The notes under the pieces are model-generated. The model saw only the letters and a program-made list of their open reading frames with translations, was not told the origin of the DNA and ran no database searches. A program made the translations under genes and the position numbers. From the sequence record MG592671.1: a DNA stretch of 64,000 nucleotides; one strand, 5' to 3'. The stretch's first letter is position 1. Every line of letters begins with the position of its first letter. This document shows, in pieces, positions 31,181-50,275 of this stretch.

Positions 31181-31814
31181 GGGTTTTTGAGCTTCGCTAG
31201 TATTGGTAATAGCATACCAATCATTTTGGTACAACGTCATCACTTAAAATAAATCTGCGTCATCATGCTACGTGACGAGCAATGTCACGCCTGTACATGA
31301 GCGCACATCACGCATGCGCCTGTGTGCCTGTACGTACATATGAGCGCACGTGTCACATGTACATGTATAAGAGTATAAGATTACAATAGTTTATCAACAG
31401 TCCTATATCATATGATAATGATTGGTGTTATAATAGGTATTACAAAGAAACTCGTCCCTACTTATATAAGGTAAAGTCAAAATCCTACCATGTTCCTATC
31501 ACCGACGTACCGGTTGACTATAGTCCCATGTCATATGACATCCTAATACAATATCCACCTAGTAGTACAAAACAATACCATTAATTAATAACATATCATC
31601 TATCAGTACTCAACATTTGAACATGGAGTTATTACTATCCATAGTCCAGACTATTCATGCCTCTATACCAGACATCATGACACTTGAACTGAGTTAAGAA
31701 TGCCATTACCATATATGGAATGGATAATGACAAGACACTGTACGGATATACATGCCTGTACAAATATACAGTGGTAGCCAGTTATAACTGTGTGAATATA
31801 CAGTGGTATAAATT

Positions 31815-32100
31815 CGCAACTAATGTTTTATATAAGTCTTTGCGCATGCGTCCAGTAATTGTGTACTAGTTGAGTAGTATGTCATAATTCACAACTATTG
31901 TTTTATACTATAGTAAGGGGTAGCTAGTTAGTTACCCAGTAAAACAATACGCAGTGATTAAATTCACAACTAATGTTTTATACTATAGTAAGGGGTTAGC
32001 TACTAACCCGCTACTTAGTTGCGCAGATTAAATTCGCAACTAATGTTTTATGATATAATATAAGCAATAACGCTTATAATTTAACAGCCCAAAGGGCTAC
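31815..32100 (+). promoter_or_regulatory. tandem promoter cluster (4 motifs) + two leader hairpins
   Basis: motifs at 31815, 31890, 31965, 32035; TAAGCAATAACGCTTA; AGCCCAAAGGGCT. Confidence 0.7.
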
Positions 32101-32110
32101 GGTAACTATT

Positions 32111-32638
32111 ATGAAAAACGCAACTAACAACACAGTAAAAACAATCCCAGCACACTACTGTGCGCTAGTAGCTCCTACAAAAGAGGTAGCTCCTACAAAA
32201 GTACACAAAACTGCTAAGGCAACCCGTGACCTTAAAAACAAAGCTGTTCGTGAGCTTTTAGTAGTAAAGAACAACGCTACTAAAACAGCGTGGGTAAGCT
32301 CAAAATATGCTTACAAAAATGCTTCTTTAGACTTGATTGTTGCAAAAATCCAAAAGCGTGCTAACAATCGCTGTGAAGCAGTAGCTAACACTTATTCATT
32401 AATTTTGCAAGGTGCTATTGTGCTAGAACGCGCTGAAATTTTAAGTGCTGATTCTACTGCATTAACTCTTGACAAATGGAACGAGTTAGTAGCTGAAGGT
32501 TACACAGTTGCAGGTCGACCTCCTAAAGGTTGTACTGCAAAAAATGTAGAAGTCAAGGAAGAAGAACCCTTGACAGAGGAACAAATTGATGCAAAGATCA
32601 GTGCGTTAATTGCACGCCGTGAACTGCTTGTCAAGTAG
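32111..32638 (+). CDS. family member 3 lacking the N-terminal HTH
   Basis: RELLVVKNNATKTAWVSSKY.YKN...GYTVAGRPPKG..EEQIDAKI matches the C-terminal domain of 30171/33061. Confidence 0.8.
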   Translation: MKNATNNTVKTIPAHYCALVAPTKEVAPTKVHKTAKATRDLKNKAVRELLVVKNNATKTAWVSSKYAYKNASLDLIVAKIQKRANNRCEAVANTYSLILQGAIVLERAEILSADSTALTLDKWNELVAEGYTVAGRPPKGCTAKNVEVKEEEPLTEEQIDAKISALIARRELLVK

Positions 32639-32705
32639 TTTGTGGTAAAATAGTAGCTGGTCACCCAGCTACTATACTATAGAGCATTAGTCAAGTGATT
32701 AAATT

Positions 32706-33050
32706 CACAACTAATGTTTTATAGTATAGTATGAGTTAGCAACAACAGGAGTTCGTAAAATGTTGACAATGCTAACTCTTATGACGTGTTAACGTATGTG
32801 ATTAGTCGCAGCAAGCGCGGCTAAATTCACAACTATTGTTTTATACTATAGTAAGGGGTTAGTTACTAGCTAGCCACTTTACTATAAAACATTAGGATGC
32901 ATGATTAAAAACGCAACTAATGTTTTATAGTAAGGTAAGGGAGCAACGCTGCTCCACATTACATAAGTTGCACAGATTAAATTCGCAACTAATGTTTTAT
33001 ATTAAAATATAAGCAATAACGCTTATAACATTAACAGCCCAAAGGGCTAA
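32706..33050 (+). promoter_or_regulatory. tandem promoter cluster (4 motifs) + leader hairpins
   Basis: motifs at 32706, 32828, 32912, 32984; leader nearly identical to 32018-32100. Confidence 0.7.
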
Positions 33051-35615: not shown

Positions 35616-35837
35616 ATGTCTTTCTTTTTAGATTCAGAAAACCTAGTAGAGATGAACACTGCTATTAATATGCATATCCCTACTGAGTATGATATGGACT
35701 TAGTAGACGATGAGCTTACAGTTGCAATGAGCGAGACTGTTAAGCCAGTACGTCGTAATGATGGCAAAGGCCAATACATTAGGCATGGCACACTACGAAA
35801 GTTTGCACGTGGTATACAGGAGCTTAATGCAGAGTAG
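35616..35837 (+). CDS. small hypothetical protein
   Basis: after last copy of the promoter motif (35544) and hairpin TAGGAC/GTCCTA. Confidence 0.6.
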   Translation: MSFFLDSENLVEMNTAINMHIPTEYDMDLVDDELTVAMSETVKPVRRNDGKGQYIRHGTLRKFARGIQELNAE

Positions 35838-35857
35838 CTGGGAGCTACGGTAACTAG

Positions 35858-35898
35858 GGCTGATGGGGCTAGCACTCCATCAGCCTTTTTTTACGGCT
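35858..35898 (+). terminator. intrinsic terminator
   Basis: GGCTGATGG/CCATCAGCC + T7. Confidence 0.75.
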
Positions 35899-36314: not shown

Positions 36315-36680
36315 GTTACGATAGTGTACTCTACCACTTCTCCCCGTCGTGCCTCCGGCACCGTTTTTGTATGGTTTAATCAAGGCATTATTACCATCCA
36401 TACGGCATCTCTATTGTTATTTTAGTCACATTTATAACTTATATGATGCAATTCAATCAATATTATACCTAAAATACTCTTAATATACCCCTTATCTGGA
36501 TATTATTTCATATTGATGTATAATTCCCTTCTAGAATGCTCAATATAGGATAATGTAGGAAAATATCGTGTTTCTATTGTTTTAGCCTGAGTATTATGTT
36601 TAGGAATGTTACATGTCGCTACTAATATGTTATAACAAATTATATATATTATTCTTTGTTTTAATCGTGTGGGAGCTCAG

Positions 36681-36995
36681 ATGTCTGAATACGGAGAACT
36701 TAAATGGACGGATGTATCTGAAGATTATGTTCGTGCGTACTCCACTTATCATAGTGAAGAGATGTTTGATGAGACTGCTGTGTTCGGCCGTCCTAAAAAC
36801 ATAGAGCATTATCGTTTAACTAATATGTTAATCCAGGGACGTTTGTGGTTATACACTCTAACCCAAGAGAGAAGCCTACGCTCATTAAAGAAACAATTCA
36901 GCGCTGGTCAACGAAGTGATCGTAGATCCTATCGTAAGAAACTCTCTTCTAAAGTTCGTGATCCATATGGTCATCTTCGTAAAGGGGCAAAATGA
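36681..36995 (+). CDS. basic small protein, QxxLxG array member 1
   Basis: TNMLIQGRLW core, K/R-rich tail; ATG 36681 after GGGAG. Confidence 0.7.
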   Translation: MSEYGELKWTDVSEDYVRAYSTYHSEEMFDETAVFGRPKNIEHYRLTNMLIQGRLWLYTLTQERSLRSLKKQFSAGQRSDRRSYRKKLSSKVRDPYGHLRKGAK

Positions 36996-37297
36996 AAATT
37001 CAAACTGAGGACGATATTGCTCGTGTTGCTTGCACTGATAGCCAAGTTGTTTGCGACTTTGGGATAGCGGTGTTCGGCAAAAAGCATACTTGGTACTTCT
37101 ATAAGAAAATACAATGTCTTCTTCGTGGAGAATATCATAAGTATAAACTTATGGAGAAGAAAGGTTATCGTGTTCGTGCACGCCGTCACTATCGTATGAT
37201 AAAGATTAGACCACAATGGGAATCGGCTGCTTCAAGCGAAGCTATCTACTGTCTTAAAAAAGTTAAGCCTAACCAACGTAGACGAGGTATTGGATAA
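36992..37297 (+). CDS. array member 2, KPNQRRRGIG tail
   Basis: IQCLLRGEY core; tail. Confidence 0.8.
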   Translation: MKIQTEDDIARVACTDSQVVCDFGIAVFGKKHTWYFYKKIQCLLRGEYHKYKLMEKKGYRVRARRHYRMIKIRPQWESAASSEAIYCLKKVKPNQRRRGIG

Positions 37298-37617
37298 TGA
37301 GGGATAAGTTTAACAACTTCACACACTCACAAGAAGAACGTCTAGTTAACGCTATAAAAATAATATTTGAAGCTAATCTAAACAAACAAAATGCTCGCGT
37401 ATTATCGTATCTTATTCGAGGTGATTACATTGCTTTGAATAAACTAGCATGGCAAACTTTACGAAAAAGTCACAAGATTAGAATAACTAAAGAAGAATCT
37501 GAATTTTTTTCTTGGGATAAGTCAAGTTTTTCTTGGTCGACAGATTTAACAAAGAAAAAATGTCTATCTGTTATCCGAGCAAGAAAACCAAATCAAAGAC
37601 GTCGAGGTATTGGATGA
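37297..37617 (+). CDS. array member 3, KPNQRRRGIG tail
   Basis: SYLIRGDY core; TAATG coupling. Confidence 0.8.
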   Translation: MRDKFNNFTHSQEERLVNAIKIIFEANLNKQNARVLSYLIRGDYIALNKLAWQTLRKSHKIRITKEESEFFSWDKSSFSWSTDLTKKKCLSVIRARKPNQRRRGIG

Positions 37618-37769
37618 GTTATAGAGTAGTATCATCCTCAGGTAAGTGGTACACTGTGGAAACTGAGGTTCAAAAACTTGCTTTCTGGCTAGGTATGATC
37701 CAAGGTGACATGATGGCGTCAACGGCATTTGAAAAGATCCAAGATACATTAGAAGGTAAAAACTTATGA
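37614..37769 (+). CDS. array member 4, short tail-less (51 aa)
   Basis: ATGA coupling; ends IQDTLEGKNL. Confidence 0.6.
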   Translation: MSYRVVSSSGKWYTVETEVQKLAFWLGMIQGDMMASTAFEKIQDTLEGKNL

Positions 37770-37939
37770 TCGTTCAAGATCACCGTTTACTGTGGCGAGA
37801 AACTCGTTGGAACTTAGGTATTTTGGATAACCCTTATAATAGTGACGAATCTAAAATGCGAGCATTCAAACAAATACAGAATGTTCTTGAAGGTGTTATC
37901 GTTTCATTTGAAACAGATGAGCTTATTAAGTGGAGTTGA
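37766..37939 (+). CDS. array member 5, short tail-less (57 aa, not in track)
   Basis: MIVQDHRLLW...KQIQNVLEGVIVSF; ATGA coupling. Confidence 0.6.
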   Translation: MIVQDHRLLWRETRWNLGILDNPYNSDESKMRAFKQIQNVLEGVIVSFETDELIKWS

Positions 37940-37942
37940 GTT

Positions 37943-38191
37943 ATGAGAGAGGAACAAATTATTGATGAGCTTAATTATCTTGTACCTAAAATAGATGGTA
38001 GCTCAGACTGGCCATCTAGAAATGGCAACTTAGGTGAATACCAATTAGTACAAGCCATCCTTGAAGGGAACTGGGGTAAGTTCTGGAGCATCGATGCTCG
38101 TGATCAAAGAGCTTGTTGTAATTACAATAGTACCTTGTTCCAAAAAGAACGCCGTGCAGACAAGAAGGCTCGTTTAAATGACCGCAAATGA
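37943..38191 (+). CDS. array member 6
   Basis: VQAILEGNW core. Confidence 0.7.
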   Translation: MREEQIIDELNYLVPKIDGSSDWPSRNGNLGEYQLVQAILEGNWGKFWSIDARDQRACCNYNSTLFQKERRADKKARLNDRK

Positions 38192-38522
38192 ATACTTTGA
38201 TCATTACTTTGCAGATGAATTAGCTAGATCTATATGGTTCATGGGGATGGCGCACGTTGGTAAACTCCGATTCGATTTCTTCTTAGGAGTACAATACGTT
38301 CTAAGTGGAGAGATGGTTAAGTTCAGAAAACATCATCACAGAATAAAACTCAAAAGTAAACGCTTTAATTCTCGTATAGTACGTGAGTCTAAACGTAAGA
38401 AGGCTGTGTATAAAAGTGGCCTACCTAAAGGCCAACGTCATTACAATACTATTAGCGAGCGCAAGTTCAAAGCCAATGAAAAACGTATACGCCTAAGTAA
38501 GCGTCGACGAGGTATAGGATGA
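38178..38522 (+). CDS. array member 7, KRRRGIG tail
   Basis: VQYVLSGEM core. Confidence 0.8.
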   Translation: MTANEYFDHYFADELARSIWFMGMAHVGKLRFDFFLGVQYVLSGEMVKFRKHHHRIKLKSKRFNSRIVRESKRKKAVYKSGLPKGQRHYNTISERKFKANEKRIRLSKRRRGIG

Positions 38523-38788
38523 AAGGAATACAATATGTAGCGCATGATATTCCTGAGTTGATATTTTGCTTAGAAGAAAATATAACTTATAAGTCCAGAA
38601 GAGAAGTATATAACATTATCCAATATCTTTTGTGTGGTAATGAATTTGCTTTGCGAAAGCGAGACAGAAAACTTCGACGTAAGGTGTGCAATCGTACTAG
38701 AAGAATGATGGCTATATTCACTACTGCTCCTGCTAAGAAGTATTCTAATAATACTAAACCAAATCAAAGACGCAGAGGTATAGGATGA
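38519..38788 (+). CDS. array member 8, KPNQRRRGIG tail
   Basis: IQYLLCGNE core. Confidence 0.8.
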   Translation: MKGIQYVAHDIPELIFCLEENITYKSRREVYNIIQYLLCGNEFALRKRDRKLRRKVCNRTRRMMAIFTTAPAKKYSNNTKPNQRRRGIG

Positions 38789-38937
38789 CATTATCAGGAC
38801 TTAATATGCACTGTATTCTCCTTAAGCAAAACGCAAAGTACCGCCATAATGCCAACAAATTATTCAATACTATCCAGCGTGTGTTGGAAGGATACGTTAT
38901 AGTGCAAGAAGATACCGCACAATGGGGTCGACTATGA
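38785..38937 (+). CDS. array member 9, short tail-less (50 aa, not in track)
   Basis: MTLSGLNMHC...IQRVLEGYVIVQ; ATGA coupled at both ends. Confidence 0.6.
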   Translation: MTLSGLNMHCILLKQNAKYRHNANKLFNTIQRVLEGYVIVQEDTAQWGRL

Positions 38938-39272
38938 CACTGCCAAAGTACCGCTATGGATTCAGTGCCTTCTTAGATTCTAAAGGTAGAGAAGAGTACA
39001 TTCAGAATACCTTGATACACTACAGTAATATGCTCGATAATAGATATATAACTACAAGTGTTAAAAAAGATACGTACAGAAAAGTACAACAGGTTATTAG
39101 TGGTGATTGGCGTAAACTTCTTAAAGAAGATTTACAAGGTCAACGAACGACGTTGTTTCATGAAGTTCAATGTGTCACTACTAGAGATGAATTATCATAC
39201 GCCTTTCAAAAGATGCTTCGTAAGAAGTTGTATAATGTCAAGCCTAACCAACGTAGACGAGGTATTGGATAA
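38934..39272 (+). CDS. array member 10, KPNQRRRGIG tail
   Basis: VQQVISGDW core; ATG 38934. Confidence 0.8.
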   Translation: MTLPKYRYGFSAFLDSKGREEYIQNTLIHYSNMLDNRYITTSVKKDTYRKVQQVISGDWRKLLKEDLQGQRTTLFHEVQCVTTRDELSYAFQKMLRKKLYNVKPNQRRRGIG

Positions 39273-39607
39273 TGTGGACATTTATAAAAACCTTAGAGAT
39301 ACTCGATCCAACTGATACTCATTACGAAGAGCGTATCCAACATCTTTGTAATAATCTGCATCGTTATTTTATTAATCGCTTTATGGCTAGAAAAGGCCAA
39401 GCTGAATACTATGGAATGCAACAGGCTATTCTTAGTGGAGATTTTCTTTACATTAAGAAGTATTGTCACCGCTATACCAAGCACAACAAAGGCCCTAACA
39501 GTTGGACTGTTTTCCCAATCGATCCACCTTTTAAAGGCTTTCATGTCCCAACAGCACGAAAACTTCGTGCACGTAAGCCAAATCAAAGACGCAGAGGTAT
39601 AGGATGA
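39272..39607 (+). CDS. array member 11, KPNQRRRGIG tail
   Basis: QQAILSGDF core. Confidence 0.8.
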   Translation: MWTFIKTLEILDPTDTHYEERIQHLCNNLHRYFINRFMARKGQAEYYGMQQAILSGDFLYIKKYCHRYTKHNKGPNSWTVFPIDPPFKGFHVPTARKLRARKPNQRRRGIG

Positions 39608-39918
39608 GTATTAGTCGGGGATTTTACAGCCGCTTAGAAGATGAAGATGGCATTTCTGAATACTTGTCTAGGATGACTCGAAACTATGAAGGTTTACAGA
39701 CAAATCATCAACAAGTTATATTCAATATAGTCCAGTGTATTTTATCTGGTAATCAAAAGCATCTTGACTATAAATCGCGTATGGCATCAAAAGCATCACA
39801 TAAGTGGTTCAATACATCTCACGCACCTAGGCATTCCACATTTTACTCGCAACGAAGAGCTAAACGTTTAGCTCTAAGGTTAATTAAGCCTAACCAACGT
39901 AGACGAGGTATTGGATAA
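39604..39918 (+). CDS. array member 12, KPNQRRRGIG tail
   Basis: VQCILSGNQ core. Confidence 0.8.
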   Translation: MSISRGFYSRLEDEDGISEYLSRMTRNYEGLQTNHQQVIFNIVQCILSGNQKHLDYKSRMASKASHKWFNTSHAPRHSTFYSQRRAKRLALRLIKPNQRRRGIG

Positions 39919-40226
39919 TGAGAGATAAAGTTAACTATTCAGAAGAAGTAGTAGTCCTTATAAGTATGATGCATGCGATGCCGATGGCAAAGAGCCCTAA
40001 ACTTCGTAGACGACTACTTAGAGGGATAACTAACATCCTTGCAGGTAATATCGAACGTGAAAGACTTAATACTAAAAAGAAAGGCATAACTAGAAAGAAG
40101 CACCGTGCTCGAGCTAGAAAACAACGAGTATTAATGCTTGATCGTTTAGCGATCCGTTGCGTCAGTAGAAGTTATATGTGGATGTTTGAGAAAAGACACA
40201 AAGTAAAACGTAGAGGTATAGGATGA
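39918..40226 (+). CDS. array member 13, HKVKRRGIG tail
   Basis: TNILAGNI core. Confidence 0.8.
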   Translation: MRDKVNYSEEVVVLISMMHAMPMAKSPKLRRRLLRGITNILAGNIERERLNTKKKGITRKKHRARARKQRVLMLDRLAIRCVSRSYMWMFEKRHKVKRRGIG

Positions 40227-40594
40227 GAACTATAGAGTGGTCAGCTCCGTCTGAAGACCAAATATACGAGTTTGCTATAGGTTGGAGTAAAGGGTTAGTT
40301 ATTCGAGATTGCACGTCTCGACTATCTCGAAAGATGCAGAAAACGTTATATAACTATAACCAAATGCTCCTTCAGGGAAACTTTGTTAGATTGGATAAAA
40401 CGTACAAGCGCTCTGAAAAACGATTACGCATAAGTCGCAAACGTGCGATGCGTAGATTGTCATTTCTCCCTGAAAAAAAGACGCTAAGGAACAAAAATAA
40501 CAAAGTTTTTTATGATACTAAACTACAAAAGCGCCGAGGATCAAATGCAAGAAGATCACATAGTAAATTTGTTAAGATCGTTTCTGTTCGATGA
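40223..40594 (+). CDS. array member 14, tail KRRG reads through the junction
   Basis: NQMLLQGNF core; KLQKRRGS then ~20 extra residues overlapping the next gene. Confidence 0.75.
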   Translation: MRTIEWSAPSEDQIYEFAIGWSKGLVIRDCTSRLSRKMQKTLYNYNQMLLQGNFVRLDKTYKRSEKRLRISRKRAMRRLSFLPEKKTLRNKNNKVFYDTKLQKRRGSNARRSHSKFVKIVSVR

Positions 40595-40832
40595 TCCAGC
40601 TGAGGATAGAAACGATCGCTTATATGACATTAGAGCATTTGGATGGGTTCTTCGAGGACAATCATATCGCTGGGGAAAGAAACGTGCTAAGTGTACCCGC
40701 ACAAGTAACAAATCTAGTATTATCATGGATCATAGATATTCTAAATTCGTTCCTCCACTTAAACAACTGCGAGACGAAGCACGAGAAAGAGTTAACAAAC
40801 GCCATAAGATTCGTCGTAGAGGAATAGGATAA
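40545..40832 (+). CDS. array member 15, HKIRRRGIG tail
   Basis: GWVLRGQS core; ATG 40545 after GAGGA. Confidence 0.75.
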   Translation: MQEDHIVNLLRSFLFDDPAEDRNDRLYDIRAFGWVLRGQSYRWGKKRAKCTRTSNKSSIIMDHRYSKFVPPLKQLRDEARERVNKRHKIRRRGIG

Positions 40833-41167
40833 TGAAATACCCTTGGTGGACAACAGCCTTAATGACAGAAGATGAACTAGCTGTCGAAATCAAGTATACA
40901 TTAATTGATATTGCGAAACTTTATGCTATAGGCGACACTCATTGTAAACAAACTATGCGTCAGAAGAAAAAGCTGTTGAGACTTCTTATGCAAGGCAATC
41001 GATACGAGTATTGGAAAGTGTGGCGTAAGACTTCCCGCTGGGAGATTTCTCGCATCCGTAAACATAATCGTATACGTAAAAAGATGCGGTTATCTGGATG
41101 GTTCCATACGTTCAAGATGAATAGACTTAAGAAGCCATATAAACAAAAGCGAAGAGGATTACCGTGA
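40832..41167 (+). CDS. array member 16, KPYKQKRRGLP tail
   Basis: RLLMQGNR core. Confidence 0.75.
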   Translation: MKYPWWTTALMTEDELAVEIKYTLIDIAKLYAIGDTHCKQTMRQKKKLLRLLMQGNRYEYWKVWRKTSRWEISRIRKHNRIRKKMRLSGWFHTFKMNRLKKPYKQKRRGLP

Positions 41168-41604
41168 GACCTAAAGTATCAATAAAGAAGAATCCGTTTG
41201 AACAGAACGAAATGGATCTTACGTACTTCATCCATATGGAACTGGAAGATATAGATCGTGGTTTCAAGTCCCAGTTATTATACTCGTACGCAGAACAGAA
41301 TACTCCTATTGGTAAACCTGTAAAGCAGCGTCGACGTAGACGTGGTAGTTCTAAAACATTCAAGTTCCTTCAAAAGCGAGCATTCAAGAATATCCAGTTG
41401 CTACTGTCAGGTGATTTTCTTAGACTTACTCAGCGCCTTAAGCCATATAAAGCGATGTACTTTGGAACAAGACGTGCGCCAGCGTATTTTAGAACTTTTC
41501 ACCGTTGGAAAGACAAACGTACTCCTGAAAATATCCAATCACTAAAGAAAGCAAAGCCTAATCAAAAACGTAGAGGTATAGGACGAGTAATCTCTGTTAT
41601 GTAA
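41164..41604 (+). CDS. array member 17, KPNQKRRGIG + 6 aa read-through; internal tail-like KPVKQRRRRRG
   Basis: IQLLLSGDF core; GTGA coupling. Confidence 0.75.
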   Translation: MRPKVSIKKNPFEQNEMDLTYFIHMELEDIDRGFKSQLLYSYAEQNTPIGKPVKQRRRRRGSSKTFKFLQKRAFKNIQLLLSGDFLRLTQRLKPYKAMYFGTRRAPAYFRTFHRWKDKRTPENIQSLKKAKPNQKRRGIGRVISVM

Positions 41605-41810
41605 AAGAATTACAATACTGTCTAGGTGAGCTTCAAGCCTGGGATAGTATTCCTGGTTGCTCACCTTTTGCAAAAAGACATTATAATATGACACAAGCAT
41701 TACTTCGTGGTGATATAGTACAGTACAAGAAGATTATCAAATATAGCGTAGGGCTTCAGCGCAATTGGCGAACTACGTATGAACAGAAAATACAACGAGG
41801 TAGATCGTAA
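41583..41810 (+). pseudogene. array member 18 with ATG>ACG start mutation (75 codons)
   Basis: open frame (T)SNLCYVKELQ...TQALLRGDI...KIQRGRS*, starts at the homologous junction where ATGA reads ACGA; TAATG-coupled to the next gene. Confidence 0.65.
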
Positions 41811-42139
41811 TGCTTAGAGAAAGATACATAACAGAATTTGTTATAGAACTAACTCATGAGATTGATCGCTTAAGTCAAGTCTTGGAGCGTCGAAAAGGTA
41901 AAACAGCCAAGATGCAAGCAGTCCCTACTAAAAAGCGCAAAATTCTTTTAAAATATCTTGAGTTGTTGGCCCGGGGAATGTACAATGAACAAAAACTAAT
42001 GACAGCTAAAGTCCGTAGATTCCAAAGCAAGAGATATAACTCTGTTAATAAGCATATGGATGTACGTAGACGGCGTGTACTGCATTCTCGAAAGAGTAAA
42101 AATCAAACTCGGTATAACAGACTAAAGAAGAAAAAGTGA
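41810..42139 (+). CDS. array member 19, very basic
   Basis: ELLARGMY core; K/R-rich C-terminus. Confidence 0.65.
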   Translation: MLRERYITEFVIELTHEIDRLSQVLERRKGKTAKMQAVPTKKRKILLKYLELLARGMYNEQKLMTAKVRRFQSKRYNSVNKHMDVRRRRVLHSRKSKNQTRYNRLKKKK

Positions 42140-42170
42140 TGCAACAGCGTATCATTACGGAGATACGAAT

Positions 42171-42407
42171 ATGACAGAGCAACAAATGCTACAGGTTATG
42201 AAACGATACGTAGATCATCATAATAGAACACATACAACTGCGTCTTCTCTTTTCGGATCATCTAAAAATAAGCATATGATTAGCCGTATATTCTATCTAT
42301 CTGAAAACTGGATGGATATAGAAATAGTTGACGGGCGCACTGCTACAGAGTCTTTTCGTATTGCGTACTCGCGCGTTCCTTCAACAGAAAGATTAAACGG
42401 ACTATAG
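42171..42407 (+). CDS. hypothetical protein
   Basis: 78 aa ORF, GGAG RBS. Confidence 0.55.
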   Translation: MTEQQMLQVMKRYVDHHNRTHTTASSLFGSSKNKHMISRIFYLSENWMDIEIVDGRTATESFRIAYSRVPSTERLNGL

Positions 42408-42471
42408 CGTCCGCATTAAATGTTATAATTAGTTATACGCAAATAACAATTATAACAAAGGGAGACAACGG

Positions 42472-42915
42472 ATGTCAGACCATGAAAAGTTGAATTTAAA
42501 GGATTTCGAACCAGACCACGATCTAGAAACACACCTTCTTGGCGACGGTTTCGATGTGCACGGTGTTATGTTTCGACATTTCGACCTAATCCAAAGTCTG
42601 CTTTATATGAGCTCATTTTGCTATGATGCAATTAGGGGATCAAATCCTGTTAAGTCGAATTCATTGTTAATTACAGTGGACAACGGAAATGGGTGCGTGC
42701 TGTGTTCTGCAGGTAATTATAATCCACCACCAGGATCTGTGGATGAATCAAACACTGCAATTGTACACGAAGATAAAACATCATATTTTTTAACTAACGG
42801 CTTCCTTGTAGACAATTTTCAACTTGAAAAACCACAAAGAGACTATGTTACTGACGAAGGTGAAATTCTAATTACTAGAATGGATATAGAAGAAATTACT
42901 GACTTACGTTTTTAG
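42472..42915 (+). CDS. hypothetical acidic protein
   Basis: after TGTTATAAT at 42421; GGGAG RBS. Confidence 0.65.
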   Translation: MSDHEKLNLKDFEPDHDLETHLLGDGFDVHGVMFRHFDLIQSLLYMSSFCYDAIRGSNPVKSNSLLITVDNGNGCVLCSAGNYNPPPGSVDESNTAIVHEDKTSYFLTNGFLVDNFQLEKPQRDYVTDEGEILITRMDIEEITDLRF

Positions 42916-42987: not shown

Positions 42988-43167
42988 ATGAATATCAAAA
43001 CAACAATTGAGATGTTAGATGGATTCTTTGACCGCATTAAGAAAGAAGAGCGCATGGATCAATACGGGAAATATAGCGAAGACTATATCAGCTCCCATAC
43101 CACTATAGCTTGGCATAACTTAGCGCAATATCTGTCAGGAGACACTCAAGGCGGGTGTGGTGATTGA
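42988..43167 (+). CDS. small protein, LxxYLSGxT family (59 aa, not in track)
   Basis: MNIKTTIEMLDG...NLAQYLSGDTQGGCGD*. Confidence 0.55.
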   Translation: MNIKTTIEMLDGFFDRIKKEERMDQYGKYSEDYISSHTTIAWHNLAQYLSGDTQGGCGD

Positions 43168-43405
43168 ACTATGGTATAAATTTAAATTTAAGTTTGTTGT
43201 GTCTGAAAAGAGAATGGGGACTTTAGAGCGCATACGCCATCTTGAGGGAAAGATTCAACATGAGATTGCAATAGACGAGTTTATGTGGTTTATGCCACCC
43301 GGCGAGGAATCACATTGCACACGAGAAGCTCGTGATAGGTTAATAGAATATCTCAACGGGCAGACAGGAGGTCATCATGGCGAATATGGTATCAATAATG
43401 AGTAG
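43157..43405 (+). CDS. small protein, LxxYLxGxTGxHHG family
   Basis: RLIEYLNGQTGGHHG. Confidence 0.6.
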   Translation: MVIELWYKFKFKFVVSEKRMGTLERIRHLEGKIQHEIAIDEFMWFMPPGEESHCTREARDRLIEYLNGQTGGHHGEYGINNE

Positions 43406-43598
43406 TGAGAATCGTTTCTATTGGGCACTTCGCACAGCATTACAGGATGTTAAACATTATGAGGATGTGCTGTTAAGTGGACTAATAACACGACACACAA
43501 TTGCATTAATTGAAGCTGAAGCAGACTTGAATGAACTGCTGTACTTGTCTGAAGAAGAATATAACAGACGATTTCCCACTAACAGGACATCACTATGA
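43377..43598 (+). CDS. hypothetical protein
   Basis: AGGAGG RBS embedded in upstream gene tail. Confidence 0.6.
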   Translation: MANMVSIMSSENRFYWALRTALQDVKHYEDVLLSGLITRHTIALIEAEADLNELLYLSEEEYNRRFPTNRTSL

Positions 43599-43740
43599 TG
43601 TTTAAAACTAGGCTATAACAACTCACAGCTTGAGACTAGTTAGTGGCTATCTGTATGTGTCTTTGACAAGAACGTTACTGATAATGTTCTTTATGTCAAA
43701 ACTATGCAAAATATTAATGATGTTTTAAATAACTACGGCA

Positions 43741-44007
43741 ATGACTATGACACTGATATCTGATACATTAATGAGTACGCCATTAATGCTATGTATATTA
43801 ATGGATAAAATAATAGAACATGAGTATATGGACGAATTGTTTAGGGATATGCCCTCAGGCACTTATAGTTACACGCCATCAAAAGCAACAAAAATTTCAT
43901 ATTGGGAACTTATAGATTACTTGTCAGGAGAAACAGGAGACCATCATGGCGAAGAAAAAGAAGGTGAAAGTGGTAGTGGATTTATCTGCGGACAAATCCA
44001 AACCTAA
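43741..44007 (+). CDS. small protein, LxxYLxGxTGxHHG family
   Basis: ELIDYLSGETGDHHG. Confidence 0.6.
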   Translation: MTMTLISDTLMSTPLMLCILMDKIIEHEYMDELFRDMPSGTYSYTPSKATKISYWELIDYLSGETGDHHGEEKEGESGSGFICGQIQT

Positions 44008-47774: not shown

Positions 47775-48950
47775 ATGGCAGCCAATACCCACCTAGAACA
47801 TCTTGAAGATTATGTTCTAACCGACATTGATCATTGCATCAACATCATCACAGACATTTCTAGTCACAACGTACGAACTATAAGTACAATTAAGTACGAT
47901 GGTAGTCCTGCGATCATATTCGGTCATAATCCAGATAACGGCATGTTCTTTTTAGGCACTAAATCGGTGTTTAACAAAACACCTAAAATCAACTATAGTG
48001 TATCTGATATTTTACAAAATCATTCTAAATCTAAAGGTCTTATGGATAAGCTAGTGTATATCTATGCTTATCTAGATAAACATAAATCTCAGTTTCCTGG
48101 TATATACCAGGCAGACTTAATGTGTACTGCTGACGATATAGTGTATAGAGAAGAAGTGACTGAGAGTGATTATTTGGGAAGAACCACTATTGCAAAGCAT
48201 CTAAACTTTAGTCCTAATACTCTAACATATCACGTGCTTAATGAAAAACTCATCGATGATATAAAAAATGCCAAAATGACAATAGCAGTCCATACGCAGT
48301 ATGATTCACTTACAAATCCAACTCCAATTTTTATCACAGGATCAACTGATGCTCAAGTCATCAATGATGATATTGTAATGCTTCCTATCCAAGTCCCTAT
48401 TACGAATATACAAACCAATAAATGGACTTATGGTAGAATAATCAAGAAGTATCAAGAATTGGATCCTGTATTGTTAGCTGAATTTAGCAATACAGAGTAT
48501 CCGGAGTTGTTTAAGATTTTCGAAAATCATATCATAAAAACTGAAGGGGAACAGATTAAAGGGAGAGGCACTAAGGATGACCAAGGGCCTAATTCAGATT
48601 GCTTTTTAAGTTGGATAATTGATCGAAGAGTCAATAACATAAAAAATCTAAAAACTACAGCTGGTAAATTGAAATACCACAAACTAATGCATGATGATAT
48701 TGAATTTTGGACACGCAAGGATATGCAAAAATTCTTTAATGAATTAATGATATTGCGCAGTGAGGTTATAAGCTTTAAGGTTAGTATTGCGCACGTTTTA
48801 GATCTAACAGATAAAAACTTCAACATCAAAGCTGGAGATTCAAAAACAAGACACGAAGGTTTTGTAGTCAGTACTGACTCTTGGCGATTTAAATTGGTGC
48901 ATAGAGAAGAATTTTCTAGACTCAATTTCTTAAAAGGGAAGTATCAATAA
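47775..48950 (+). CDS. ligase-like nucleotidyltransferase-fold protein (NTHLEHLED / KxDG family, DUF6267-like)
   Basis: NTHLEHLED, KYDGSPAI, GTKSVFNK.PKIN, YQADL, HEGFV, FKLV.R.EFSRLNF. Confidence 0.65.
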   Translation: MAANTHLEHLEDYVLTDIDHCINIITDISSHNVRTISTIKYDGSPAIIFGHNPDNGMFFLGTKSVFNKTPKINYSVSDILQNHSKSKGLMDKLVYIYAYLDKHKSQFPGIYQADLMCTADDIVYREEVTESDYLGRTTIAKHLNFSPNTLTYHVLNEKLIDDIKNAKMTIAVHTQYDSLTNPTPIFITGSTDAQVINDDIVMLPIQVPITNIQTNKWTYGRIIKKYQELDPVLLAEFSNTEYPELFKIFENHIIKTEGEQIKGRGTKDDQGPNSDCFLSWIIDRRVNNIKNLKTTAGKLKYHKLMHDDIEFWTRKDMQKFFNELMILRSEVISFKVSIAHVLDLTDKNFNIKAGDSKTRHEGFVVSTDSWRFKLVHREEFSRLNFLKGKYQ

Positions 48951-49282
48951 TGACAACTATTACTGATAGATGGGGTAAAAAGATAGAAGTGGAGGGATCA
49001 GAGCCGTATACAGTGGACTATACAGTAGATCAAGTTCGACAATATGCTCATGTCTGGGCTCGCCATAACTCTGCTGGCGCGCATTTTAAAGATATGATGA
49101 AATTTTGTGAATATTACAATGAAAAGCGAACAGCGATTCTTTGGGAAACTGGGTTCGAAGATTGGGCATTTAACTTTGAGTTTATCAAAGACAGTGCTGT
49201 GTTATATGTAACAATCCATGATTGGTACACATTACTGCCAGATGAGCACAAAGTGACCTTAGGTTTAGGAGGCTGGGAATGA
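48950..49282 (+). CDS. small protein, W..LPDE..VTL tail family member 1
   Basis: DWYTLLPDEHKVTLGLGGWE. Confidence 0.7.
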   Translation: MTTITDRWGKKIEVEGSEPYTVDYTVDQVRQYAHVWARHNSAGAHFKDMMKFCEYYNEKRTAILWETGFEDWAFNFEFIKDSAVLYVTIHDWYTLLPDEHKVTLGLGGWE

Positions 49283-49611
49283 AAAACTTCACATACAGGG
49301 AAGTAAAAGAGTACAACGTTACATACATAGTTAATGACATTGACCAAATTGCAAGCTCTACTGGAGAATACTACCATACTAATAAACTCACTGAAAAATA
49401 CCAACCTATGTGGGACTATTGCTATGATAAACTAGTTTTGAATCATAGTGTGATACGAGATACTGACTTTGCAGATAAACATTGGAGTCTGAATGACGAC
49501 GGTTGTCACGGAGAACACTTTACTACAATATATTGTGGTATGTGTGAATGGTTTGAAACTTTATCAGTCGACGAGAAAGTAACAGTCACATTATTAGGAT
49601 TTAGCTTATGA
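49279..49611 (+). CDS. tail family member 2
   Basis: EWFETLSVDEKVTVTLLGFSL. Confidence 0.7.
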   Translation: MKNFTYREVKEYNVTYIVNDIDQIASSTGEYYHTNKLTEKYQPMWDYCYDKLVLNHSVIRDTDFADKHWSLNDDGCHGEHFTTIYCGMCEWFETLSVDEKVTVTLLGFSL

Positions 49612-49943
49612 CGCCAGAATTTGTTTTGAAATGTTTATCATATTACAATGACGGCTACCGTTGTTTTATGCTACCCCCTGCAGGGATGCCTAGCGATGTT
49701 CGTGCATTCTTTCGTTCTAAAATCGGCGAAAGAGATGCCGATGGCGTATTGATAAAATATTGTGTTGACTCTTATACTACATTCCACGAGTCTCTACCAG
49801 GAACTGAGTATGATGATGGCTTTTGTGTATTAAGAAACGAGTCAAGAATGTATACTGATATGTACCCCCGTCTTTATAAGTGGTTCCATGAACTTCCAGA
49901 TGAAGATCAAGTGACTTTGACATTACTAGGAGCTTCGTTATGA
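49608..49943 (+). CDS. tail family member 3
   Basis: KWFHELPDEDQVTLTLLGASL; recent duplicate of next gene. Confidence 0.8.
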   Translation: MTPEFVLKCLSYYNDGYRCFMLPPAGMPSDVRAFFRSKIGERDADGVLIKYCVDSYTTFHESLPGTEYDDGFCVLRNESRMYTDMYPRLYKWFHELPDEDQVTLTLLGASL

Positions 49944-50275
49944 CGCCAGAATTTGTTTTGAGATGTTTGCTATATTTTAATGATGGATATCGTTGTTATA
50001 TGGTAACCCCTGCAGGGATGCCTAAAGACGTTGAGGCATTCTTTCTTTCTAGAAGCGGCAATAACGATGCTGATGATATTTTGATAAATTATTGTGTCGA
50101 TTCCTGTAATTCATTTTATGTTTCTTTATCTGGAACTGAGTATGATGATGGCTTTAAGATACTAGGGGAAAAGCATAGTACCTATACTGAGTTTTACCCC
50201 CGTCTTTATAAGTGGTTCCATGAACTTCCAGATGAAGATCAAGTGACTTTGACATTACTAGGAGCTTCGTTATGA
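49940..50275 (+). CDS. tail family member 4
   Basis: last 83 bp including junction identical to member 3 (49863-49945 = 50195-50277). Confidence 0.8.
   Translation: MTPEFVLRCLLYFNDGYRCYMVTPAGMPKDVEAFFLSRSGNNDADDILINYCVDSCNSFYVSLSGTEYDDGFKILGEKHSTYTEFYPRLYKWFHELPDEDQVTLTLLGASL

What the first reader, a model, noticed from the sequence alone, without database searches (positions are those of the whole stretch)
37265..41582. The array tail is selected at the peptide level: two DNA alleles that differ only synonymously
Seen: allele A AAG CCT AAC CAA CGT AGA CGA GGT ATT GGA TAA (identical 35 nt at 37265, 39240, 39886) and allele B AA(A/G) CCA AAT CAA AGA CG(T/C) (C/A)GA GGT AT(T/A) GGA TGA (37585, 38756, 39575). 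Every difference is synonymous, including the two-base CGT/AGA Arg swaps. The GAGGT Shine-Dalgarno for the next gene sits inside the RRG codons, which could explain RRG, but not the conservation of KPNQ or IG. Inference: the 10-mer peptide is functional, while the DNA doubles as a translational-coupling module and a 35-bp recombination substrate for gene gain and loss.
Basis: partly seen in the sequence, partly recalled or inferred. Interest (0 to 1): 0.75.

Follow-up and report, generated by a model that had tools for sequence, protein, structure and literature searches.

The report
Conserved peptide tail on phage paralogs
A giant Vibrio phage carries a row of 19 small related genes, about half of which end in the same arginine-rich tail; the tail is preserved as protein while its DNA also serves as the ribosome-binding site of the next gene, and the family is new with an unknown function.

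Summary
The window is Vibrio phage 2.275.O (349 kb). Positions 36681-42139 hold 19 head-to-tail paralogs whose stops overlap the next starts. Ten members carry ..RRGIG. Six end in the exact KPNQRRRGIG, written with four different DNA codings that differ only synonymously (7-9 of 30 nt). Only 1e-5 to 2e-7 of all sequences at those distances would keep the peptide.

Four metagenomic contigs carry the same family. Counting them, 12 copies of the identical 10-mer use 9 codings, and R-G-I-G is invariant in 20 of 20 tails, although the bodies are barely alignable. Two relatives keep the tail where no gene follows closely, and one keeps it without the GAGG word, so the Shine-Dalgarno role alone does not explain it.

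Codon choice shows a second, RNA-level constraint (Arg7, Gly8, Gly10). Three identical codings are too many for chance, which suggests DNA copying or strong RNA constraint. A role of the repeats in gene gain and loss is not shown.

The family matches nothing in Pfam, PHROGs, NCBIfam, PADLOC, PDB or BFVD. The predicted fold is helical, with a long basic helix and a disordered tail. My best guess is a shared C-terminal anchor to one common, probably polyanionic, partner.

The parts
36612..36646 (+). Diverged copy of the phage's repeated promoter-like box, just upstream of the array; likely operon start
   Evidence: Repeat family D2. The box core AATGTTNTATAW matches 44 times in the window against 9 expected, mostly on the + strand upstream of small genes. 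Function is inferred.
36681..36995 (+). g1 (NVP2275O_157), 104 aa; has the N-module and basic C-half, no tail; ATGA overlap with g2
36992..37297 (+). g2 (_158), 101 aa; tail KPNQRRRGIG at 37265-37294 (coding A); TAATG junction
37297..37617 (+). g3 (_159), 106 aa; tail at 37585-37614 (coding B1); ATGA junction
37614..37769 (+). g4 (_160), 51 aa; short form with the N-module only
37766..37939 (+). g5 (_161), 57 aa; short form with the N-module only
37943..38191 (+). g6 (_162), 82 aa; N-module plus a short basic end, no tail
38178..38522 (+). g7 (_163), 114 aa; ends ..KRRRGIG, without KPNQ
38519..38788 (+). g8 (_164), 89 aa; tail at 38756-38785 (coding B2)
38785..38937 (+). g9 (_165), 50 aa; short form with the N-module only
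38934..39272 (+). g10 (_166), 112 aa; tail at 39240-39269 (coding A); the member used for the structure model
39272..39607 (+). g11 (_167), 111 aa; tail at 39575-39604 (coding B3)
39604..39918 (+). g12 (_168), 104 aa; tail at 39886-39915 (coding A). Identity with the g2/g3 junction continues into the first six codons of g13
   Evidence: (D3)
39918..40226 (+). g13 (_169), 102 aa; ends ..KRRGIG, without KPNQ
40223..40594 (+). g14 (_170), 123 aa; keeps K-R-R-G, which holds the SD word for g15, then reads on and overlaps g15 by 50 nt; no GIG end
40545..40832 (+). g15 (_171), 95 aa; ends ..RRRGIG, without KPNQ; TAATG junction
40832..41167 (+). g16 (_172), 111 aa; variant end ..KRRGLP; GTGA junction
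41164..41604 (+). g17 (_173), 146 aa; tail copy KPNQKRRGIG at 41554-41583 lies six codons before the stop
41688..41810 (+). g18 (_174), annotated as 40 aa. Family similarity continues upstream in the same frame where no canonical start is available, so one start has been lost
41810..42139 (+). g19 (_175), 109 aa; last member; basic, no tail
42415..42437 (+). Next promoter-like box, marking the end of the array unit. The same box follows the array in relative L004
   Evidence: (D13)

Best explanation
The tail is the C-terminal end of a previously undescribed family of small (about 90-146 aa), very basic, all-helical phage proteins. The family is encoded as one translationally coupled operon of 19 paralogs in the replication/early-type arm of a T4-type jumbo vibriophage.

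Two constraints share the same 30 nucleotides.
1. Purifying selection on the peptide, strongest on R-R-G-I-G and strong on K-P-N-Q. This is shown.
2. An RNA-level constraint. The Arg7-Gly8 codons supply the Shine-Dalgarno word for the next cistron, and the last Gly codon and the stop overlap its start. This fixes which synonymous codons are used. The codon bias is shown; coupling itself is inferred.

Inferred function: each full-length protein has a variable N-terminal three-helix module and a long basic helix that ends at the Pro. After the Pro comes the unstructured Arg-rich tail, which acts as a common anchor. This short linear motif docks every paralog onto the same partner while the N-modules differ. 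Given net charges of +10 to +21 in the C-terminal halves, I think the partner is most likely a nucleic acid or ribonucleoprotein. An acidic protein surface is the main alternative.

Occasional DNA-level copying between tails is likely but not proven.
For: - Identity and layout.
- Ten ..RRGIG tails against 0.01 expected by chance.
- All differences among the six exact tails are synonymous; the share of sequences at that distance keeping the peptide is 1.5e-5 to 2.3e-7.
- Bodies are only 25-35% identical and the flanks show random-level DNA identity.
- An exhaustive HMMER search of 1.8e9 representatives found only five outside proteins, all with the tail.
- Their array neighbours were not selected for the tail. 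Six of 10 complete neighbours end ..RRGIG, five of them with the full 10-mer.
- Twelve identical 10-mers use 9 codings. R7, G8, I9 and G10 are 20/20 with 4, 3, 2 and 4 codon types.
- The tail is kept without a closely following start (L004, twice) and without GAGG (L002).
- SD words were derived from 52 other genes; the tail's GAGG lies at -10 or -13.
- Arg7 keeps the purine run in 19/20 against 21/36 at Arg5/6 (p=0.005). Gly8 is GGT in 17/20 against Gly10 in 1/20 (p=4e-7).
- AF2 model with mean pLDDT 79.8: helices 16-35, 41-56 and 59-102, last 10 residues coil.
- pI 10-11.8 and C-half net charge +10 to +21 in tail-bearing members.
- Tail and N-module occur only in this array in the 349-kb genome.
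Against: - No direct evidence on function. Nothing matches in Pfam, PHROGs, NCBIfam, PADLOC, PDB or BFVD.
- Purely electrostatic nucleic-acid binding would tolerate Arg/Lys exchange and would not need Ile flanked by Gly. The strictness of R-G-I-G hints at a shaped pocket, possibly on a protein.
- Nine of the 19 window members lack the tail. Three members on contig L005 carry an RG-hydrophobic-G or RGP core followed by 3-6 more residues. A free C-terminus, and the tail itself, are therefore not indispensable to every member.
- The five outside hits were found with a profile dominated by the tail, so they are biased. Only their neighbours are unbiased.
- The sample of relatives is small (four contigs).
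Confidence: 0.5

Rival explanations
1. The tail is a C-terminal degradation or hand-over tag recognised by a Clp-type machine of the host or the phage. The paralogs would then be short-lived regulators, or adaptors that bring different bound targets to the protease.
For: - The tail is unstructured, basic and at the extreme C-terminus.
- It loosely resembles the MuA-type class of ClpX signals: a Q/N, a basic run, then a small or hydrophobic end. The motif rule is in PMC3983244 and the MuA degron is listed in PMC12723719.
- The phage itself encodes a true ClpS, two ClpP and a two-ring Clp ATPase.
Against: - The published rule R/H-x-K/R-K-hydrophobic is not met. Gly sits where Lys is required, and an extra Gly follows the hydrophobic residue.
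- The phage ATPase is ClpA/B-type, not ClpX, and ClpS serves N-terminal signals.
- Members on L005 carry the core several residues before the end.
Confidence: 0.12
2. The tail is a packaging address that places the small basic proteins inside the capsid, functionally like the conserved leader of T4 internal proteins or the C-terminal cargo peptides of encapsulins.
For: - A conserved terminal decapeptide sits on otherwise hypervariable, small, basic, clustered proteins of a T4-type phage (Virfam Type 2).
- The phage has a T4-like prohead core protease and capsid genes.
- The analogy itself rests on textbook knowledge, not on a test here.
Against: - The array sits in the replication/early-type arm, about 210 kb from the head genes.
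- The motif is C-terminal, whereas the T4 leader is N-terminal.
- No other protein of the phage carries the tail, so it is not a general address.
- No virion proteome exists for this phage.
Confidence: 0.08
3. The peptide acts while still in the ribosome. The Arg-rich nascent chain slows termination so that the ribosome restarts on the overlapping start codon, which would be a peptide-encoded coupling device.
For: The tail always ends at, or a few codons before, the stop. The stop overlaps the next start in 9 of the 10 window cases. Ten residues is roughly the stretch nearest the peptidyl-transferase centre (general knowledge).
Against: - Junctions without a tail are overlapped in the same way (g1, g4, g9 and others).
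- Tails persist where no start overlaps or follows closely (L004 twice, L002).
- On L005 the core lies 3-6 residues before the stop.
Confidence: 0.05
4. There is no peptide function. The repeat is kept as DNA or RNA only, through the SD plus start context, an RNA structure, or gene conversion that homogenises a 35-nt junction cassette.
For: - Three identical 35-39-nt copies have unrelated flanks. Identity of three codings has a probability of about 1e-6 under codon usage.
- There is clear RNA-level codon bias at Arg7, Gly8 and Gly10.
- Observed synonymous distances (4.2-4.8) are below the 6.9 expected for fully independent codings.
Against: - A DNA- or RNA-level constraint conserves bases, not amino acids. 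Here 7-9 of 30 bases differ and every change is synonymous.
- Nine codings encode one peptide across genomes.
- There is no consensus RNA structure.
- The tail is conserved without the SD word and without a coupled gene.
Confidence: 0.03

Closest known systems
Overlapping-cistron translational coupling (ATGA/TAATG stop-start overlaps with the SD inside the upstream coding sequence), common in phage and bacterial operons
   Same: Stops overlap the next starts at 16 of the 18 junctions between array genes. A purine-rich SD word lies 8-14 nt upstream, inside the upstream gene's last codons. Codon choice is biased to keep it.
   Different: Here the same codons are also under strict amino-acid selection, and the peptide is kept in relatives where no coupled gene follows. 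Coupling was not measured.
Capsid-targeting leader of T4-type internal proteins (a conserved terminal peptide of about 10 residues on hypervariable small basic proteins; textbook knowledge, not tested here)
   Same: A terminal decapeptide is conserved across otherwise very divergent, small, basic, clustered proteins of a T4-type phage.
   Different: The motif is C-terminal, not N-terminal. No sequence likeness was tested or claimed. The array lies in the early/replication arm. There is no evidence for cleavage or packaging.
MuA-type C-terminal ClpX recognition signals (C-motif 2; rule as given in PMC3983244, degron as listed in PMC12723719)
   Same: An unstructured extreme C-terminus with a polar Q/N, a run of basic residues and a small or hydrophobic end. 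The phage also encodes ClpS, ClpP (two copies) and a Clp ATPase.
   Different: The published rule is not met, because Gly stands in place of the required Lys and the tail ends in an extra Gly. The phage ATPase is ClpA/B-type.
Arginine-rich nucleic-acid-binding peptides (ARM-type tails of phage and viral regulators; general knowledge)
   Same: Three or four basic residues within ten, invariant Arg at the last basic position with Lys only rarely at the two before it, and Gly residues next to the basic run. The tail follows a long basic helix.
   Different: No target RNA or DNA is known. No conserved hairpin accompanies the array. The tail sits at the extreme C-terminus and ends in Gly-Ile-Gly.

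Membership tests
Translationally coupled overlapping cistrons | Stop codon of the upstream gene overlaps or abuts the start codon of the downstream gene | tested here: met
   ATGA, TAATG or GTGA overlaps, or longer ones, at 16 of the 18 junctions between array genes; every tail-bearing gene except g17 overlaps the next start.
Translationally coupled overlapping cistrons | SD-like word at a suitable distance inside the upstream coding sequence | tested here: met
   GAGG at -10 or -13. The phage's SD words (AAGG, AGGA, GGAG, GAGG) were derived from 52 other genes. Codon bias at Arg7 and Gly8 keeps the word.
Translationally coupled overlapping cistrons | Downstream translation depends on upstream translation | not testable with these tools
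   Needs ribosome profiling or expression data.
ClpX C-motif-2 (MuA-type) degron | C-terminal R/H-x-K/R-K-hydrophobic (rule quoted in PMC3983244) | tested here: not met
   The tail has Gly at the Lys position and a further Gly after the hydrophobic residue.
ClpX C-motif-2 (MuA-type) degron | ClpXP-dependent degradation | not testable with these tools
   No stability data exist.
T4-type internal-protein capsid-targeting leader | Conserved peptide at the N-terminus, removed by the prohead protease | tested here: not met
   The conserved peptide is C-terminal and the N-termini are variable. Cleavage is not testable.
T4-type internal-protein capsid-targeting leader | Proteins present inside the virion | not testable with these tools
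   No virion proteome was found for this phage.
Arginine-rich (ARM-type) nucleic-acid-binding peptide | Short Arg-rich stretch binding a defined RNA or DNA element | tested here: inconclusive
   The composition fits. No conserved RNA structure was found at the junctions. Binding is not testable.
Any curated protein family or solved fold (Pfam, PHROGs, NCBIfam, PADLOC, PDB, BFVD) | Significant profile or fold match | tested here: not met
   No match above the curated cut-offs. PDB profile search gave 0 hits at E<=10. Foldseek found nothing at E<=0.001 except the protein itself.
Recombination or gene-conversion cassette at gene junctions | Identity tracts confined to the junction, more alike than chance allows, plus rearrangements with breakpoints in the tract | tested here: inconclusive
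   The first part is met: three identical 35-39-nt tracts, P about 1e-6, with random flanks. No rearrangement or presence/absence pair with a breakpoint in a tail was found, and the relatives have no one-to-one orthologs to map.

The most novel reading that the evidence does not exclude
The array is a phage-encoded set of interchangeable adaptors. Each variable N-module would grip a different host or phage target. The invariant R-G-I-G end would plug all of them into one machine, and the phage's own ClpA-type/ClpP/ClpS system is the concrete candidate. That would give the phage a programmable targeted-degradation or remodelling toolkit whose address label is also the ribosome-binding site of the next gene.
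Probability: 0.07. Interest if true: 0.85.

Novelty: new variant of a known kind. Interest (0 to 1): 0.45.

Why it matters
It is an unusually clean natural example of dual coding. Ten codons are read both as an invariant peptide and as the translation-initiation signal of the next gene, and the two constraints can be separated statistically.

It also defines an orphan multigene family: 19 copies in one jumbo phage and at least 9 genes in a row in a relative. The conserved end and fast-diverging bodies are the signature of proteins that share one docking point but differ in what they recognise. Such families in jumbo phages are a main reservoir of unknown host-takeover functions. A 10-residue handle gives a direct way to find their common partner.

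Tried and rejected
- Pfam and PHROGs scans of ten members gave only sub-threshold noise. NCBIfam, PADLOC and a PDB profile search gave nothing.
- tblastn against 50,697 phage records matched only the phage itself.
- The word-indexed protein search with the family profile returned only window proteins. Restricted to the last 40 residues, it returned only the query.
- A DNA pattern for the full tail plus stop found 0 matches in viral contigs.
- A relaxed pattern in metagenome contigs gave 74 loci, all chance. None has a family HMM hit, and four have a stop right after the match against about 3.5 expected.
- Foldseek against PDB and BFVD found no informative fold.
- RNAalifold on 20 junctions predicted no pairs, so RNA structure is rejected.
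- A full-text search for the tail letters found only irrelevant papers.
- The ClpX C-motif-2 likeness does not meet the rule.
- The idea that the N-module also occurs in the small genes at 42988-44007 is not supported by the HMM.
- The idea that the tail is a portable tag on unrelated proteins is rejected by the whole-genome scan.

Full report
**What the window is.** Megablast places window 36600-42200 at 100% identity on Vibrio phage 2.275.O._10N.286.54.E11 (MG592671.1, 348,911 bp, host Vibrio cyclitrophicus). Window coordinate equals record coordinate minus 62000. The Nahant Collection paper lists it as a myovirus, Virfam Type 2, with 489 genes and 19 tRNAs, the largest Vibrio virus genome described at the time (PMC6029569). 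All array genes are annotated 'hypothetical' or 'coil containing protein' (NVP2275O_157-175).

**Anatomy.** Nineteen plus-strand genes, g1 to g19, run head to tail from 36681 to 42139. Stops overlap the next starts as ATGA, TAATG or GTGA at most junctions.
- A diverged copy of a promoter-like box that is abundant in this genome arm precedes g1 (36612-36646). The next good box follows the array at 42415. No good copy of that box and no plus-strand terminator-like site lies inside the array. So the array is most simply one operon; this is inferred.
- The proteins are paralogs. A family HMM built from 11 members hits exactly these ORFs and nothing else in the window or in the whole genome.
- They share an N-terminal module ending in a Q-x-x-L-x-G turn, followed in the long forms by a K/R-rich half (pI 10-11.8, net +10 to +21 in the C-terminal half of tail-bearing members).
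- Three members (g4, g5, g9) are short forms with the N-module only.
- Pairwise identity of the bodies is about 25-35%.

**Checking the observation.**
- The degenerate pattern for R-R-G-I-G occurs 10 times, all in frame at gene ends inside the array, against 0.01 expected.
- Six genes (g2, g3, g8, g10, g11, g12) end in exactly KPNQRRRGIG. g2, g10 and g12 share one coding over 35-39 nt, and the other three use three further codings.
- Codings differ at 7-9 of 30 positions and every difference is synonymous, including the two-base Arg swaps.
- Among all sequences at those Hamming distances from coding A, only 1.5e-5 to 2.3e-7 keep the peptide.
- g17 has a Lys at tail position 5, and its tail lies six codons before its stop.
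- g7, g13 and g15 have ..[KR]RRGIG without KPNQ. g16 ends ..KRRGLP. g14 keeps K-R-R-G and then reads on over the start of g15.
- g18 is annotated only from an internal ATG, because no canonical start is available where the family similarity begins (one start lost).
- g1, g6 and g19 are basic but lack the tail.

**Relatives.**
- Single-sequence and word-indexed searches found nothing outside the phage.
- An exhaustive HMMER search of 1.84e9 cluster representatives with the family profile found the eleven query members and five outside proteins (E 2.5e-5 to 7e-4). Four end in the tail or a one-residue variant; the fifth (P0016) has the KPNQ start, then Lys-Lys-Arg-Gly-Pro and three further residues.
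- This set is biased, because the tail dominates the profile.
- Their contigs give unbiased neighbours. L003 is a 2.7-kb contig made entirely of such genes. Of its six other complete genes, five end in the exact 10-mer and one does not.
- In L004, one neighbour ends ..RRRGIG and one lacks the tail.
- In L005, the two neighbours carry an R-G-(L/V)-G core followed by five or six more residues.
- L004 is syntenic with the window: its array is followed by a promoter-like box and a 147-aa gene homologous to window 42472-42915.
- With the last 12 residues removed, bodies from different contigs are barely alignable and there are no one-to-one orthologs.

**Pooled tally.** Over 20 ..RRGIG tails (10 in the window, 10 outside), residue shares by tail position are as follows.

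| Position | Residue share | Codon types |
|---|---|---|
| 1 | K 15/20 | |
| 2 | P 15/20 | |
| 3 | N 15/20 | |
| 4 | Q 15/20 | |
| 5 | R 17/20, K 3/20 | |
| 6 | R 19/20 | |
| 7 | R 20/20 | 4 |
| 8 | G 20/20 | 3 |
| 9 | I 20/20 | 2 |
| 10 | G 20/20 | 4 |

The set was chosen for having ..RRGIG, so invariance at positions 6-10 of these 20 is partly by construction. The codon diversity is not. Twelve copies of the identical 10-mer use nine DNA codings. Their mean synonymous distance is 4.2 nt within a genome and 4.8 between genomes, against 6.9 expected for independent codings under the window's codon usage. Peptide-level purifying selection is therefore established as firmly as sequence data alone allow.

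**The RNA layer.**
- SD words derived from 52 other genes of the window (AAGG, AGGA, GGAG, GAGG enriched 5-10 fold at -20..-4) match the tail's GAGG at -10 (ATGA junctions) or -13 (TAATG junctions). Junctions without a tail have their own SD-like words.
- Codon choice shows the constraint. Arg7 uses codons that keep the purine run in 19/20 against 21/36 at Arg5/6 (p=0.005). Gly8 is GGT in 17/20 while Gly10 is GGT in 1/20 and GGA in 17/20 (p=4e-7). ATC is never used for Ile although it makes up 25% of Ile codons in the window.
- The SD cannot be the whole story. L002 writes Arg7-Gly8 without GAGG. In L004, one tail is followed by a gap of at least 30 nt before the next start, and the last array member keeps ..RRRGIG before about 100 nt of spacer with a promoter-like box.
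- RNAalifold finds no shared structure across the 20 junctions.

**The DNA layer.**
- Three identical codings among six have a probability of about 1e-6 under codon usage, even when Arg7 and Gly8 are restricted to SD-keeping codons. L003 also has one identical pair in adjacent genes.
- Identity ends within a few bases of the tail, except that the g2/g3 and g12/g13 junctions stay 94% alike over 52 nt, into the first six codons of the downstream genes.
- This fits short-tract copying or recombination at the junction. It fits equally well a set of allowed codings much smaller than codon usage suggests.
- I found no gain or loss event with a breakpoint in a tail.

**Structure and family membership.**
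- AlphaFold2 on a 17-sequence alignment gives mean pLDDT 79.8, with helices at 16-35, 41-56 and 59-102. The conserved Gly sits at the turn between helices 2 and 3. The Pro ends the long basic helix, and the last ten residues are coil with lower confidence.
- Foldseek finds nothing informative in PDB or BFVD beyond the phage's own paralogs.
- Pfam, PHROGs, NCBIfam, PADLOC and a PDB profile search are all negative.
- The literature holds nothing on the motif.

**Context.**
- The array lies in a roughly 120-kb plus-strand arm of small unknown genes interspersed with a DNA ligase, Sir2, a sigma-like protein, RNR and similar genes. The head and tail modules are far away.
- The phage encodes IF-3, bS21, a true ClpS (PF02617), two ClpP (PF00574), a two-ring Clp ATPase and GroEL/ES.
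- The whole-genome scan shows the tail on no other protein. The nearest look-alike is a ..KRGPGK end on the ORF after the capsid gene.

**How it most likely works.**
- Shown: a paralog operon, peptide-level selection on the C-terminal motif, and SD/start double use with codon bias.
- Inferred: the tail is an unstructured Arg-rich anchor that docks all long-form paralogs onto one common partner, while the fast-evolving N-modules differ. The extreme basicity makes a nucleic acid or ribonucleoprotein my first choice. The strictness of R-G-I-G leaves a protein pocket as a serious alternative.
- Rivals, with my probabilities: a Clp-type tag (0.12), a packaging address (0.08), a nascent-peptide coupling device (0.05), and no peptide function (0.03).
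- The MuA-type ClpX signal was tested against the rule printed in PMC3983244 and does not fit.

**Verdict.** It is a new orphan family showing a known kind of arrangement (coupled paralog array, conserved terminal motif) in an unusually clean form. Interest is 0.45.

1. I stopped when I noticed, used none of them in any tool call, script or this report, and relied on motifs printed in papers instead.
2. In one search a script joined the fetched pieces of the public phage record in memory, as they stand, solely to scan all reading frames. Only translated stop-to-stop segments were written to scratch. No repaired, consensus or ancestral sequence was built.

Noticed in passing
window 2961-35562, mostly + strand (for example 24008, 25505, 26203, 27155, 34863, 35551); also 42415-42437 and L004 about 1030-1050: A promoter-like box with core AATGTTTTATA[AT] sits inside a longer repeat of about 35 nt. 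It matches 44 times in the window against 9 expected, nearly always just upstream of small plus-strand genes. It is conserved upstream of the homologous 147-aa gene in the metagenomic relative. It is probably this phage group's promoter for one temporal class.
   Followed up: partly
window 31922-31974 (record 93922-93974): The record annotates a 'CRISPR spacer' here. The site lies between copies of the promoter-like box (31822, 31972, 32042), so the CRISPR call is probably an artefact of those repeats.
   Followed up: partly
window 48950-50275: A second small array: four paralogs of about 110 aa with ATGA overlaps, all ending in a similar hydrophobic Leu/Gly-rich C-terminus. The last two are near-identical duplicates. 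Conserved ends at coupled junctions recur in this phage.
   Followed up: no
window 42988-44007: Three small ORFs share a C-terminal L-[SN]-G-x-T-G-x-H-H-G-E-like motif and a 42-nt DNA repeat (family D7). They are not related to the array family by HMM.
   Followed up: partly
record 137216-140042 (outside the window; L084 11216-14042): Thirteen consecutive genes of about 65-90 aa with short overlaps, probably another paralog array.
   Followed up: no
record 31702-32933, 133399-133959, 147785-148486, 272105-274321 (outside the window): The phage encodes IF-3, bS21, a true ClpS (PF02617), two ClpP (PF00574) and a two-ring Clp ATPase, besides GroEL/ES. That is a large investment in translation and proteolysis.
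   Followed up: partly
record 317537-317992 (outside the window; L087 41537-41992): The ORF just downstream of the major capsid gene ends in a basic ..KRGPGK. It is the only other tail-like C-terminus in the genome and has no Pfam match.
   Followed up: partly
record 184859-191593 (outside the window): Phage tRNAs include Gln-TTG, Asn-GTT, Pro-TGG, Arg-TCT, Gly-TCC and Ile-GAT. These are isoacceptors for six of the seven residue types of the tail, and for its favoured AGA, GGA and CAA codons. This may be coincidence.
   Followed up: no
window 35856-35887: A strong intrinsic-terminator-like hairpin (13-bp stem followed by a T run) after the gene at 35616-35837, about 750 nt upstream of the array's promoter-like box.
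   Followed up: no
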